Source of the DNA: Scyliorhinus canicula
Lineage: Eukaryota
Direction of reading: 5' to 3'
NCBI RefSeq assembly: GCF_902713615.1
Contig: NC_052168.1
Span: 11,532,001-11,596,000 of the forward strand
Length of the DNA: 64,000 nt
Made by a program: the position numbers and the translations under genes. Of this stretch, positions 2,106 to 21,589 are shown piece by piece. How positions within the stretch are numbered: the first letter of the stretch is position 1; each line of letters opens with the position of its first letter. The notes beneath the pieces are model-generated. The model made no database searches and was not told the DNA's origin. It was given only the letters and a program-made list of their open reading frames with translations.

Positions 2106-2261
2106 CTAACTGCTGTCCTCTAGCGAGAGCTTGTCAAACAGGTACTCTCCCATCCCATTCTCAGGAGCTCCCAGCCGCTTCAGGTTGGTGATGTAGTCAC
2201 CCAGTCGCTTGATGACCTTGACCTGCTCGTCCAAATAGTGAGTCTCCAGAAAGTCACACAG
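2106..2261 (-). CDS. Ferritin copy 1 exon 4 (coding part)
   Basis: [15 protein letters not shown]...[16 protein letters not shown] stop; AATAAA at 2053-2048. Confidence 0.95.
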
Positions 2262-5200
2262 CTGGAAGAGAAAGAAATATGAAGAGATGGTCATAAACGT
2301 GAAGATCAGCTAATTCTCTTCACACCCCCTGTTCCTCGTCAGGAGAGGATTAGTGTTTCACTTCATTGTGCCACACAAACCATCTCAAAAGGACTTGATA
2401 GGATTGTAAATCTGTTCTTTAGGATGTCAGTAAGTCAGGAATGTTAAGCAAGGCAGTAATTTTCAGTTACATCCCAAAAGAACTATTCCATCCAATCCAT
2501 GTTTAAGTGTAGTCATTGTTGAGATGTAGGACATGCAACATCTTATCTGGTGCAGAGCAAGATCCCACAGACAACAAGCAAGACAATATAAAAGCCTACC
2601 AGTGATCAGAATTATGATGAAGTAAAGCTTACATGAGGGTCAGTCTGGGTGGTGGCGAGTTGGTGAAGATCCAGCAAACTCTGGTTCACATTCTTCTCCA
2701 GATCCAGGGCAACCTGCATTGCCTGGAGACTGTTACCCCACTCATCCCGCTCTGGTTTCTACAATGCGGAAAGACAGGTCAGTTATTTCAGGGTGCTTGC
2801 ATCACATCATTTACACCCTCAGAAGTTCAGGAAAGGATTAGTTTTGGGGCAATGCTGCAGGAATACGATGCAGAAACCAGTCAAAATGGCTCATGCATTA
2901 GAACATAGAACAGTACAGCACAGAACAGGCCCTTCGGCCCTCGATGTTGTGCCGAGCAATGATCACCCCACTTAAACCCACGTAACCCGTATACCCGTAA
3001 CCCAACAATCCCCCCATTAACCTTACACTATGGGCAATTTAGCATGGCCAATCCACCTAACCCGCACATCTTTGGACTGTGGGAGGAAACCGGAGCACCC
3101 GGAGGAAACCCACGCACACACGGGGAGGACGTGCAGACTCCACACAGACAGTGACCCAGCCGGGAATCGAACCTGGGACCCTGGAGCTGTGAAGCATTGA
3201 TGCTAACCACCATGCTACCGTGAGGCCCCTAGAGTACATGTAGCAGGATTAAGACATCGTTCTGCATAAGCCATGTAGTGAGATACATGACAGGTGAAGC
3301 TTTAAAGAAACTTCTCCCTCCCCCTTTAGGATTTGATCATCCTGTCAGTCTACTCAATTGAAGCCGCCATTTCCCCACAATTCCAACCTTCACATCCTGT
3401 AGGAGGATGCGGCCTCCACGTTGATTTTGGAATTTAATCAGCTTCTCCGCATGTTCCTGCTTCTCCTGGGACTGATGTTTGAAGAACTGGGAGAAGTTGT
3501 TGAGGGCGACATCATCCCGGTCAAAGAAAGACGTCTGAAAGGGAACAACCCAGATCCCATTAACCACATCGTTCAGGCCCCCCCCCGTCAAAAGTATTCT
3601 CTTTGCCTTTCTCAGTTCTATTGAATGGTCCATAACCCAATTGTGAAGATTCATCTATGGGGCCAATAACCATCCAATACAAGTACCATTTGGAAGGAGT
3701 TAGGACTCCCATTTCAGTTTAGAATTCACAGTACAGAAGGAGGCCATTCGGCCCATCGAGTCTGCACCAGCTCTTGGAAAGAGCACTCTACCCAGGCCCA
3801 CATCTCCACCCTATCCCCATAACCCAGTAACACCACCCAACATGAAGGGCAATTTTGGACACTAAGGGCAATTTATCATGGCCAATCCACCTAACCTGCA
3901 CATCTTTGGACTGTGGGAGGAAACCGGAGCACCCGGAGGAAACCCACACATACACGGGGAGAACTTGCAGGCTCCGCACAGACAGTGACCCAAGCCGGAA
4001 TCGAACCTGGGACCCTGGAGCCGTGAAGCATTTGTGCTATCCACAATGCTACCGTGCTCTTAGGAATAGATTACTCAAGCGTTTTGCATCTACTCAATTA
4101 AGTATTGCTAACCAGAATTCAACTGACTGCCAGAAATAACTGAATGTTACACACATTTGCAATATTAGACACCATGAAAATAGGAATTAAAAATATCACT
4201 TCTGATGAAAGTCTCATTTCTCCCAGAAAACGCAAGGACTTCCATTGAGAGAGCAGGCAACAACAAATTAGTTGCTACAATTCCAATTTCAGAGTATCTT
4301 TTAACCGTGGCAAGATATTGACACACTAATGATTGTTATGGGACAGGTCACCTAGAGCAGTGCTTCTCAAAGTGTGGTACGCGTACCGGTACGCGAGCCA
4401 TCGTCTGCAGGTACTTGGGAGTGTTTCCAGAAAAGAAAGAGACAGCAAACCTGGATTGGCTTGTTTCGCTCACCGGTCCCTGGCACATTGAAAAAAAACT
4501 GCCGGTCCCCCACATCAGATAGTTTGAGATGCACTGACCTAGAGAACACGTTAAAATTCTCAGGCAGAAAACACCTGGAAATAAAGCTGGTGACAGGTAA
4601 AAGTGACCCTGAAACCAGTCCAAATTATTAGAATCTCAACTGGGTCATTAATGAAAGTTGCTGTATAGACAGTGTGGTCTATGGGAGACTGCATTTCCAC
4701 AATGACTATTTCAGGTGAGTCAGCAATCAGTTGTGGTCAGCAGCAAATGGCAGTCACAGATGACTAAATGTTCAAAGATTAGCTCATGAACATTTCTGCT
4801 TGGTGTATATCAATGGCAGCTAGTTCCCATACCAGGGGAGCTTAGATTGGCCACACTAAATTGCCCTTAGTATCCCAAAAGGTTAGGTGTTGTTACTGTG
4901 GAGCCTTGGGTAGGGTAGGGTGCTCTTTGGAAGGGCCAGCGTGGACTCAAATGGCCTCCTTCAGCACTGTAAATTCTATGATCTATGGCCATCACTCACC
5001 CTGAAGTAATATTACCAATAATTCAGTTGGATTTACTTTTGTTAGGACAGGAACAAAACAAATAAAACAGGTACCAATTCAAAGGATAAAAGCAAATTAC
5101 TGCAGATGCTGGATCCTGAAAATAAAATCCTGGAAAAACTCAGGTCAGACAACATCTGGTGAGAGAACACGCTATCTGATGTGAGAGAACACACACTAAT

Positions 5201-21300: not shown

Positions 21301-21589
21301 TCCTCAGCACCATAGGCAGCAATGCTAACCACTGTGCCACCGTACTGCCCGGATTCTCAAACCTAATGCAACTGACTCAACCCCCTTCCAAAATAACTAG
21401 GAAAACCATCTCAGTCGTAGCAACTAAGGACAAGGGCAGTAAATACCAGTCTGAACCCAAGACCAAATTCAGAAAGTCAAGACTCACCACAGAAAGATAA
21501 AGATAGGAAGCAGTGAGCTCCAGGTTAATCTGCTTGTTGACAGCTGCTTCACAATCCTGGTGATAGTTTTGACAAACCTGGGAGTCCAT
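18203..21589 (-). CDS. Ferritin subunit gene copy 3 (176 aa); exons 21589-21488, 19474-19328, 19019-18894, 18358-18203
   Basis: [90 protein letters not shown]...TQTDPH/LCDFLE...LSLEDCS*. Intact splice sites; AATAAA at 18102-18097. Confidence 0.96.
18894..19019 (-). CDS. Ferritin copy 3 exon 3
   Basis: 126 nt, AG/GT flanks. Confidence 0.95.
19328..19474 (-). CDS. Ferritin copy 3 exon 2
   Basis: 147 nt, AG/GT flanks. Confidence 0.95.
19879..21350. mobile_element. Cluster of four HE1-type SINEs in ferritin 3 intron 1 (one nested, one with an internal duplication)
   Basis: V-cores on both strands; the copy at ~21124-21351 has the TSD GATTCTCAAACCT. Confidence 0.85.
21488..21589 (-). CDS. Ferritin copy 3 exon 1 (coding part)
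   Basis: ATG at 21589; donor GTGAGT. Confidence 0.95.

What the first reader, a model, noticed from the sequence alone, without database searches (positions are those of the whole stretch)
2106..21589. Tandem array of three intact shark ferritins with an L-chain-like Lys62 ferroxidase substitution but otherwise H/M-type ligands
Seen: helix B reads QSQEKQEH (copies 1 and 2) or QSREKQEH (copy 3), where catalytic H chains read QSHEEREH, so the bridging ligand E62 (human H numbering) is Lys in all copies. E27, Y34, E61, H65, E107, Q141 and the 3-fold channel H118/C130/D131/E134 are retained. The C-terminus FDKLSL puts Leu, not His, at 173. Positions 57 and 60 are H and Q/R, not the L-type nucleation glutamates. 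Established: K62 (salt-bridged to E107) and L173 are hallmarks of mammalian L ferritin, and E62K/H65G abolishes H-chain ferroxidase activity. Inference: these are ferroxidase-poor, stabilised subunits that also lack a full L nucleation site. They could be a convergent or ancestral proto-L state, expanded in copy number and possibly serving a structural or non-iron-storage role.
Basis: partly seen in the sequence, partly recalled or inferred. Interest (0 to 1): 0.8.

Follow-up and report, generated by a model that had tools for sequence, protein, structure and literature searches.

The report
Catalytically dead shark ferritin gene array
Three intact, neighbouring shark genes encode an iron-storage protein (ferritin) whose iron-oxidising site carries a lysine known to kill that activity in mammals. 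They also lack the RNA switch that normally ties ferritin output to iron, so they offer a second, probably independent case of how a "light-chain-like" ferritin arises.

Summary
Three complete four-exon ferritin genes (176 aa each) lie head to tail on the minus strand. All have Lys at human-H position 62 and Leu at 173, with E27, Y34, E61, H65, E107, Q141 and the 3-fold channel residues kept.

They belong to a shark-wide, multi-copy "K62" subfamily found in carcharhiniform, lamniform, orectolobiform and hexanchiform sharks. The copies are under purifying selection (dN/dS 0.11-0.18).

None has an iron-responsive element, although Rfam finds one readily in skate FTH1 and in a bamboo-shark H-type mRNA. 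Their TATA/CCAAT promoter is alignable with that of the catalytically intact, equally IRE-less shark ferritin arrays.

Lys62 is universal in coelacanth and tetrapod L chains. In FTHL17 the same change is reported as sufficient to abolish ferroxidase activity. The most likely reading is therefore a ferroxidase-dead, L-like partner subunit.

With the position-62 column removed, trees put the K62 clade beside the intact shark arrays in 91% of bootstraps. This favours convergence with L chains, but AU tests reject neither topology.

The scan had already found this: five more K62 genes just before this window (s1-207375) and the missing IRE on this stretch (s1-228694). A 2024 preprint reports the shark ferritin expansion, labelled FTL/FTH1, with ovary expression. 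Function has not been assayed.

The parts
2106..5418 (-). K62 ferritin gene copy 1, ATG to stop. Exons are 5317-5418, 3388-3534, 2633-2758 and 2106-2261; product 176 aa.
   Evidence: GT/AG at all three introns and an open 531-nt CDS. Exons 2-4 hit Pfam PF00210.
10689..13268 (-). K62 ferritin gene copy 2. Exons are 13167-13268, 12235-12381, 11852-11977 and 10689-10844; product 176 aa.
   Evidence: It is 95.5% nt-identical to copy 1 in the CDS, with dN/dS 0.13.
18203..21589 (-). K62 ferritin gene copy 3. Exons are 21488-21589, 19328-19474, 18894-19019 and 18203-18358; product 176 aa. It has R60 and ends in ...EDCS.
   Evidence: dN/dS against copies 1 and 2 is 0.11 and 0.18.
5419..5680 (-). Promoter and 5' UTR of copy 1. 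TATAAAT lies at 5528-5534 (-116 from the ATG), TGATGTCA at about 5578, and four inverted CCAAT boxes at 5610-5677. There is no IRE.
   Evidence: Motif positions are. The region aligns with the Heptranchias K62 and intact-array promoters. Rfam finds nothing IRE-like at E<=10.
13269..13520 (-). Promoter and 5' UTR of copy 2. TATAAAT lies at 13368-13374 (-106), TGATGTCA at about 13417, and CCAAT boxes at 13432-13515. There is no IRE.
21590..21890 (-). Promoter and 5' UTR of copy 3. TATAAAT lies at 21688-21694 (-105), AATGTCA at about 21736, and CCAAT boxes at 21758-21883. There is no IRE.
2048..2053 (-). Poly(A) signal AATAAA of copy 1, 52 nt after the stop codon.
10622..10635 (-). Poly(A) signals ATTAAA and AATAAA of copy 2, 53 and 61 nt after the stop codon.
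18091..18102 (-). Poly(A) signals AATAAA and ATTAAA of copy 3, 100 and 106 nt after the stop codon.

Best explanation
The three genes are functional members of a shark-specific, tandemly amplified ferritin subfamily, the 'K62 clade'. Shown: the genes are intact, under purifying selection, conserved across galeomorph and hexanchiform sharks, and carry their own TATA/CCAAT promoter and poly(A) signals but no iron-responsive element. Inferred from precedent: Lys62 replaces the carboxylate that bridges the two irons of the ferroxidase centre and pairs with the invariant Glu107. The subunit therefore cannot catalyse fast Fe(II) oxidation, but it still folds, assembles and keeps the 3-fold entry channel (D131/E134) and the inner-surface E61/E64. 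Inferred: it acts as an L-like, non-catalytic partner that co-assembles with the catalytically intact, also IRE-less shark array ferritins. Those lie on the same chromosome and use a homologous promoter. Output would be set by transcription and gene dosage, not by IRP and iron. The most likely site of action is the ovary, for loading oocytes with iron. The Lys62 state most likely arose independently of the Lys62 of coelacanth and tetrapod L chains, inside a lineage that may itself be the shark counterpart of FTL.
For: Gene integrity is shown. dN/dS among the copies is 0.11-0.18 at dS about 0.15. K62 orthologues occur in Mustelus, Carcharodon, Cetorhinus, Chiloscyllium, Hemiscyllium, Stegostoma, Rhincodon and Heptranchias, with clusters of 43-76 members. 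They form a clade with 100/97-99 support. E62K is reported as sufficient to abolish ferroxidase activity in FTHL17, which keeps the other ligands (PMC7760355). The K62-E107 salt bridge replaces the iron site in L ferritin (PMC11396501). K62 and E107 never change in either the K62 clade or the L clade. The other six ligand positions change at about the average rate in the K62 clade (3 observed, 4.2 expected) and in the L clade (19 against 15.7), but never in FTH1 (0 against 5.8). Decay is visible: H65R and H65C plus E61A in Heptranchias, H65R in one Cetorhinus copy, and Q141E in all orectolobiform copies. No IRE is found in the window, at the Heptranchias K62 locus or in the Heptranchias intact array. 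Positive controls score 42.6-46.7 bits. The K62 and intact-array promoters are alignable, unlike the GC-rich, TATA-less skate FTH1 promoter. With column 62 removed, the K62 clade groups with the intact arrays in 914 of 1000 bootstraps. With 19 ferroxidase-linked columns removed, support for that grouping is 93/91. The preprint reports ovary-specific RNA for the largest shark ferritin cluster. RNA-type runs hold about 0.20 of the words of the 3.5-kb gene, which matches an mRNA of about 0.7 kb.
Against: No activity, assembly or tissue data exist for these proteins. E27, Y34, E61, H65, E107 and Q141 are all still present in this species, so a residual or altered metal site cannot be excluded. The ligand-rate test rests on only three changes. 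Ovary expression is reported for another species and for a cluster whose copies were labelled only FTL/FTH1. Words from exon 1 plus the 5' flank of copy 1 reach only 0.38-0.50 of the sampled words, and only in runs of one sample, so the transcription start is not fixed by reads. With all columns kept, the best tree puts the K62 clade with L chains (79/43). AU tests do not reject either arrangement (p 0.34-0.44).
Confidence: 0.6

Rival explanations
1. Single origin: the K62 clade is the shark orthologue of the FTL light chain. On this reading E62K arose once, before cartilaginous and bony vertebrates split. The shark protein would then preserve the earliest L-chain state: K62 and L173 with the remaining H-type ligands still in place.
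For: K62 and L173 are universal in coelacanth, amphibian, reptile and mammalian L chains, and some frog L chains still keep E27, Y34, E61 and E107. With all columns kept, the K62, L and intact-array clades form one group (90/94), and K62+L is the best resolution (79/43). AU tests never reject K62+L (p 0.44 and 0.34). S52 and T122 are shared by the K62 clade and L only. Unverified scan notes place SNRNP70, IRF3, TEAD2/DKKL1 and a glycogen synthase on the same chromosome piece, which corresponds to the human FTL neighbourhood at 19q13.33.
Against: Removing only the position-62 column drops K62+L to 25 of 1000 bootstraps and raises K62+intact arrays to 914. The K62 clade and the intact arrays share K22 and L158, an alignable promoter and the absence of an IRE. 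From general knowledge, tetrapod L mRNAs carry an IRE. E62 is lost repeatedly: K in one Heptranchias intact-array copy, N in others, G in a sawfish copy, and K in FTHL17. The synteny rests on notes that I could not check.
Confidence: 0.27
2. FTHL17-like role: the K62 ferritins are germline-specific proteins that do not store iron. On this reading they keep or deliver Fe(II), possibly in the nucleus, rather than serving as structural partners in storage cages.
For: FTHL17 has the same site pattern: K62 with the other ligands kept, and L173 in marsupial copies. FTHL17 is multi-copy in mouse, restricted to germ and embryonic stem cells, and partly nuclear. The shark ferritin cluster is reported as ovary-specific. 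The K62 genes escape IRP control because they have no IRE.
Against: FTHL17 is reported as unstable (title of the primary paper). The shark genes keep E107, the salt-bridge partner, along with all channel and interface hallmarks. The shark genes are not related to FTHL17: marsupial FTHL17 groups with amphibian H/M ferritins. I noticed no nuclear-targeting feature in the sequence, but ran no predictor.
Confidence: 0.1
3. The site is still active or repurposed. On this reading the retained E27, Y34, E61, H65, E107 and Q141 mean that the subunit still binds and oxidises iron, more slowly or by a different route, or binds another metal.
For: All six remaining ligands are intact in the three copies here and in most galeomorph orthologues. 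Changes at these positions are few (3).
Against: E62K is reported as sufficient to abolish activity. Several lineages have lost H65, E61 or Q141 without losing the gene. Sharks evolve slowly, so retention may simply reflect slow decay. Observed change matches the average rate rather than the zero seen in catalytic clades.
Confidence: 0.1
4. The genes are redundant, drifting copies on their way to becoming pseudogenes.
For: Very large arrays tolerate defective members. Some intact-array copies have lost ligands.
Against: All three ORFs, splice sites, promoters and poly(A) signals are intact. dN/dS is 0.11-0.18. K62 is fixed across a clade that spans hexanchiform and galeomorph sharks. RNA-type runs hold the exon words.
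Confidence: 0.03

Closest known systems
Vertebrate ferritin light chain (FTL; coelacanth and tetrapod L clade)
   Same: K62, E107 and L173 are invariant in both groups, and G166 is shared. The site is predicted to be non-catalytic and replaced by a K62-E107 salt bridge. The 3-fold channel residues are kept. Orectolobiform K62 copies also have the L-type Q141E. The two groups fall in one supergroup with all columns kept (90/94).
   Different: Here E27, H65 and Q141 are kept. There are no nucleation glutamates at 57 and 60. There is no IRE. The genes sit in a multi-copy tandem array. Identity to L chains is only 60-66%, against 72-75% to M and to the intact shark array ferritins. With column 62 removed, the K62 clade is not sister to L.
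FTHL17 (ferritin heavy polypeptide-like 17)
   Same: The ligand pattern is the same: E62K with the rest conserved, which was shown experimentally to lack ferroxidase activity. Marsupial copies also have L173. FTHL17 is multi-copy in mouse and is expressed in the germline.
   Different: FTHL17 is mammalian and X-linked, and from general knowledge it is intronless. It is reported as unstable and partly nuclear. It is phylogenetically unrelated to the shark clade. The shark genes keep the ancestral four-exon structure.
Catalytically intact, IRE-less shark ferritin arrays (M144/L173 type), the 'FTH1/FTL' expansion of Greenland and white sharks
   Same: They lie on the same chromosome in every shark checked, judged by shared contig lengths. 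In Heptranchias the two are 4 Mb apart. In this genome they are 5.6-5.9 Mb apart (scan notes). The promoters are alignable, neither has an IRE, and both carry L173, K22 and L158. They are the likely sister clade. The expansion and its ovary expression were reported in bioRxiv 10.1101/2024.09.09.611499.
   Different: Those copies keep E62 and Y29, so they should be catalytically active. The preprint does not mention residue 62 or the missing IRE.
Bullfrog M ferritin (PDB 1MFR, 4MJY) and human H ferritin (1FHA)
   Same: These are the closest solved structures. The Mustelus orthologue matches at E 8e-84 and 6e-79 over its full length, and copy 1 is 72% identical to bullfrog M. The four-helix bundle plus E helix is therefore assured.
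   Different: Both are catalytic subunits with Glu at the bridging position, and from general knowledge both mRNAs carry an IRE.

Membership tests
Eukaryotic 24-mer ferritin (Pfam PF00210) | Ferritin-like four-helix-bundle domain over the whole protein | tested here: met
   Exons 2 to 4 of copy 1 hit PF00210 at E 3.5e-9, 7.5e-5 and 0.0078 respectively; only exon 2 alone exceeds the curated cut-off. The 91.5%-identical Mustelus orthologue scores 125.9 bits. It also matches M and H ferritin structures over the full length.
Eukaryotic 24-mer ferritin (Pfam PF00210) | Conserved vertebrate gene structure (four exons, three introns at the canonical positions) and 3-fold channel residues D131/E134 | tested here: met
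Catalytic H/M-type ferritin | Complete ferroxidase centre: E27, Y34, E61, E62, H65, E107 and Q141 | tested here: not met
   Position 62 is Lys in all three copies and in every member of the clade; the other six ligands are present.
Catalytic H/M-type ferritin | 5' UTR iron-responsive element | tested here: not met
   No IRE_I or IRE_II match is found in the window at gathering score, or at E<=10 upstream of any copy. Controls in skate FTH1 and a bamboo-shark H-type mRNA score 46.7 and 42.6 bits. The transcription start is inferred from the TATA box and is not mapped by reads.
Catalytic H/M-type ferritin | Fast Fe(II) oxidation | not testable with these tools
   This needs recombinant protein and kinetics.
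L-type ferritin (FTL lineage) | K62 paired with E107, and Leu at 173 | tested here: met
L-type ferritin (FTL lineage) | Loss of other ferroxidase ligands (E27, H65) and gain of cavity nucleation glutamates (E57, E60) | tested here: not met
   The window copies have E27, H65, H57 and Q/R60. Some orthologues show partial decay: H65R/C, E61A, Q141E, and E60 in lamniforms.
L-type ferritin (FTL lineage) | Phylogenetic placement inside or sister to the L clade | tested here: inconclusive
   K62+L has 79/43 support with all columns but only 25 of 1000 bootstraps once column 62 is dropped. AU p-values are 0.34-0.44 either way. The wider K62+L+intact-array group has 90/94 support and 736 of 1000 bootstraps.
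L-type ferritin (FTL lineage) | Position next to GYS1/BAX (human 19q13.33 synteny) | tested here: inconclusive
   No other gene was recognised in the remaining 42 kb of the window, judged only by eye from long ORFs. Unverified scan notes put SNRNP70, IRF3, TEAD2/DKKL1 and a glycogen synthase 4.3-11.3 Mb away on the same piece. Direct neighbours in other sharks are Frag1-family and Rac-family genes.
FTHL17 | E62K with the remaining centre conserved | tested here: met
FTHL17 | Mammalian X-linked lineage (common descent) | tested here: not met
   Marsupial FTHL17 groups with amphibian H/M ferritins, far from the shark clade. The shark genes have introns.

The most novel reading that the evidence does not exclude
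The shark K62 ferritins and the intact IRE-less arrays may together be the cartilaginous-fish counterpart of FTL, sitting in the GYS1/SNRNP70/IRF3 neighbourhood. In the strongest version, E62K arose once before the split of cartilaginous and bony vertebrates. The K62 proteins would then be living examples of the first light chain: a single Lys in an otherwise complete H-type site, later freed from iron-responsive control and amplified for oocyte iron provisioning.
Probability: 0.27. Interest if true: 0.7.

Novelty: new variant of a known kind. Interest (0 to 1): 0.55.

Why it matters
Textbook accounts treat the non-catalytic light chain as a tetrapod, often "mammalian", speciality. Here a second vertebrate lineage has a fixed, amplified and selected ferritin with the same single inactivating change, caught at an early stage with every other ligand still present.

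This makes two old questions testable with natural proteins. First, is E62K alone enough to turn an H subunit into a stable L-like partner? Second, when and how often did light chains arise?

The loss of the IRE, together with high gene dosage, also shows a way of regulating ferritin without iron sensing. That may bear on how large yolky shark eggs are stocked with iron.

The value is limited in three ways. The shark gene expansion is already published as a preprint. The K62-only pattern is already characterised in FTHL17. The scan had already reported the same family next door.

Tried and rejected
- **Read laying.** I tried to lay RNA reads on copy 1 to map splicing and the transcription start. 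Two run searches give only word shares.
- **Upstream leader exon with an IRE.** I looked for one and found no CAGTG loop within 450 nt of any ATG. Rfam finds nothing at E<=10.
- **A fourth copy or pseudogene fragments in the window.** None were found.
- **Other genes for synteny in 22-64 kb.** I saw only repeats and satellites by eye among the long ORFs, and ran no family scan on them.
- **DNA of Mustelus, Carcharodon, Cetorhinus and Chiloscyllium loci.** Only Heptranchias and skate loci could be read.
- **Literature on shark, ray or chondrichthyan ferritin subunits and residue 62.** Nothing specific turned up beyond the Greenland shark preprint. The library covers open-access papers only.
- **Pseudogene reading.** Rejected on intactness and dN/dS.
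- **FTHL17 membership.** Rejected on phylogeny and gene structure.
- **Structure prediction.** Not run. The tool returns no coordinates, so it could not test a K62-E107 contact, and the fold is already assured by about 70% identity (computed for copy 1: 72%) to solved structures.
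Full report
**What is there**

The minus strand of 2106-21589 carries three complete ferritin genes in a head-to-tail array with a 7.5-8.8 kb period. Each gene has four exons of 102, 147, 126 and 156 nt. Every intron has GT/AG, and the introns sit at the usual vertebrate ferritin positions. 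Each CDS is open and encodes 176 aa.

Each gene also has a full set of control signals:
- TATAAAT lies 105-116 nt before the ATG.
- Several inverted CCAAT boxes and a TGATGTCA-like element lie further upstream.
- A poly(A) signal lies 52-106 nt after the stop.

tblastn finds no further copy or fragment in the window. I recognised no other gene by eye among the long ORFs of the remaining 42 kb, which is mostly repeats and satellites.

I aligned the three proteins to macaque FTH1, which matches the human numbering over the N-terminus and helix B. All three copies have E27, Y34, H57, E61, K62, H65, E107, Q141, H118, C130, D131, E134 and L173. Position 60 is Q, Q and R in copies 1, 2 and 3. There is no gap anywhere in helix B, so the Lys is unambiguously at the bridging-ligand position. 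A further change shared by nearly the whole clade is Y29 to T.

**These are working genes**

The copies are 95-96% identical in the CDS, with dS about 0.15 and dN/dS 0.11-0.18. Introns differ by SINE-type insertions, while exons and about 1.3 kb of upstream sequence remain alignable.

In RNA-type public runs, up to 0.20 of the sampled words of the 3.5-kb gene are present. This equals the share expected for an mRNA of about 0.7 kb. Words from exon 1 plus the 5' flank of copy 1 are common only in runs of one sample (0.38-0.50). This is compatible with restricted expression, but it does not fix the transcription start.

**The family**

Protein searches find the same K62 type annotated as "heavy/middle subunit-like" in eight genera:
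- Mustelus (91.5% identical to copy 1)
- Carcharodon and Cetorhinus
- Chiloscyllium, Hemiscyllium, Stegostoma and Rhincodon
- the hexanchiform Heptranchias

The 90%-identity clusters hold 43-76 member sequences from single genomes, so copy number is high. The scan's own notes report five more K62 genes starting 5 kb before this window (s1-207375). The K62 sequences form a clade with 100/97-99 support. No K62-type protein appeared among the best hits for Scyliorhinus, Heterodontus, Pristiophorus, skates, sawfish or Callorhinchus. Because the lists are truncated, this is only a hint of absence.

**Why the site is probably dead**

The literature held here gives two direct precedents. FTHL17 lacks ferroxidase activity because of Glu62 to Lys, "shown to be sufficient", while its other ligands are conserved (PMC7760355). 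In L ferritin a Lys62-Glu107 salt bridge replaces the iron site and stabilises the protein (PMC11396501).

A simple rate test agrees with this. K62 and E107 never change in either the K62 clade or the L clade. For the other six ligand positions, observed changes against the number expected at the clade's average rate are:

| Clade | Observed | Expected |
|---|---|---|
| K62 | 3 | 4.2 |
| L | 19 | 15.7 |
| FTH1 | 0 | 5.8 |
| Second canonical chondrichthyan clade | 0 | 2.2 |

The decay can be seen directly:
- The two adjacent Heptranchias K62 genes read QSHAKREC and QSHEKRER, that is E61A with H65C, and H65R.
- One Cetorhinus copy has H65R.
- All orectolobiform copies have the L-type Q141E.

The numbers are small, and sharks evolve slowly. 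A residual or altered metal site in the species of this window therefore remains possible.

**Regulation**

Rfam finds no IRE anywhere in the window at gathering score, and nothing IRE-like at E<=10 upstream of any copy. The same model finds clear IREs in two controls:
- Skate FTH1 scores 46.7 bits. That gene lies next to INCENP as in human, so it is the true FTH1 orthologue.
- A bamboo-shark H-type mRNA scores 42.6 bits.

The Heptranchias K62 locus and a Heptranchias array of catalytically intact ferritins also lack an IRE. The K62 promoters of this shark and of Heptranchias align with each other and with the promoters of the intact Heptranchias array. The shared elements are the CCAAT boxes, CATCATTG-TGATGTCA and TATAAAT. 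The sequence between TATA and ATG is not conserved. The skate FTH1 promoter is GC-rich, lacks a TATA box and is unrelated. These genes are therefore driven by a conserved promoter and escape IRP control. The missing IRE on this stretch had been noted by the scan (s1-228694).

**Origin: convergent or ancestral?**

K62 and L173 are not mammalian specialities. They are present in every coelacanth, amphibian, reptile and mammalian L chain sampled. I built three trees:

1. With all 176 columns, the K62 clade, the L clade and the intact shark array clade (M144/L173 type) form one group (90/94). Within it K62+L is weakly preferred (79/43). Holding K62 with the intact arrays costs 3.1 lnL units, AU p 0.36.
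2. With only the position-62 column and one long sawfish branch removed, K62+intact arrays appears in 914 of 1000 bootstraps. K62+L appears in 25, and the three-clade group in 736. The AU test for K62+L gives p 0.34.
3. With 19 ferroxidase-linked columns removed, K62+intact arrays has 93/91 support. The L clade then drops to the base of the vertebrates, probably through long-branch attraction.

Other characters point in different directions:
- The K62 clade and the intact arrays share K22, L158, the promoter, the IRE loss and the chromosome.
- The K62 clade and L share S52, K62 and T122.
- All three share G166 and L173.
- Residue 62 is lost repeatedly elsewhere: K and N in individual Heptranchias array copies, G in a sawfish copy, and K in FTHL17.

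I therefore favour an independent E62K in sharks, at about two in three. It would have occurred inside a lineage that may as a whole correspond to FTL.

Unverified scan notes place SNRNP70, IRF3, a TEAD2/DKKL1-like pair and a glycogen synthase on the same chromosome piece, 4.3-11.3 Mb away. In human these genes surround FTL at 19q13.33. I could not check those notes, so they count only as a lead.

**What was already known**

A 2024 preprint on the Greenland shark genome reports 155 "FTL" and 179 "FTH1" copies in three clusters shared with the white shark. It dates the duplications to at least 250 million years and reports ovary-specific RNA for the largest cluster. It does not mention residue 62 or the IRE.

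Searches of the open-access library for shark or ray ferritin subunits, residue 62 and ferritin family evolution returned nothing more specific. The scan itself had already reported the K62 array next door and the IRE-less intact arrays 5.6-5.9 Mb away.

**Verdict**

This is a real, conserved and probably expressed array of ferritin genes. By direct precedent they encode a non-catalytic, L-like subunit that is not under iron-responsive control.

It is a new variant of a known kind, not a new kind. Its interest lies in offering a natural, early-stage "light chain" and a test case for how often light chains arose. Function, tissue and partner subunits remain to be measured.

Noticed in passing
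window 58050-63592: A 5.5-kb satellite built on a 23-nt unit (TRF periods 46, 69 and 115; 86-87% matches) with very strong strand asymmetry. It produces long spurious ORFs in all frames.
   Followed up: partly
window 55331-57070: A (TTGGG)n pentanucleotide array of about 300 units, interrupted by the two N runs at 56523-56749 and 57073-57409.
   Followed up: partly
window 3025-3222, 3859-4056, 6376-6573, 14310-14438, 16991-17119, 19978-20118 and others: Repeated SINE-like elements of about 130-200 nt lie in the ferritin introns and spacers. They account for most of the length differences between the three gene copies.
   Followed up: no
window 7218-9173 (minus strand): Long ORFs between copies 1 and 2 contain an FADD-type motif and proline-rich stretches. 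They look like a decayed LINE reverse-transcriptase fragment. A related piece lies at 23516-23650.
   Followed up: no
window 17403-17686: A perfect tandem duplication of 142 nt (100% identical) lies in the spacer between copies 2 and 3.
   Followed up: no
L001 1496-5931 and 10001-11756 (Heptranchias perlo CM068676.1): Two adjacent K62 ferritin genes have lost further ligands (E61A with H65C, and H65R). They are followed by a Rac-family GTPase gene.
   Followed up: partly
Proteins P0144, P0176, P0183 (Heptranchias) and P0235 (Pristis pectinata): Individual copies inside the catalytically intact shark and ray array clade have independently replaced E62 with K, N or G. The bridging ligand is therefore lost repeatedly in these arrays.
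   Followed up: partly
Proteins P0228, P0365, P0366 (marsupial FTHL17): Marsupial FTHL17 shows the same K62/L173 pattern. In my tree it groups with amphibian H/M ferritins and not with FTH1 (90/95). This is unexpected for a supposed FTH1-derived gene.
   Followed up: no
Loci of P0001 (Mustelus) and P0135 (Cetorhinus); no DNA served: K62 ferritin genes are flanked by Frag1-family (TMEM150/DRAM-like, PF10277) genes in two shark species.
   Followed up: no
Protein P0462 (Erpetoichthys calabaricus): A bichir ferritin inside the M clade carries T29 and L173, two residues otherwise typical of the shark K62 clade, but it keeps E62.
   Followed up: no
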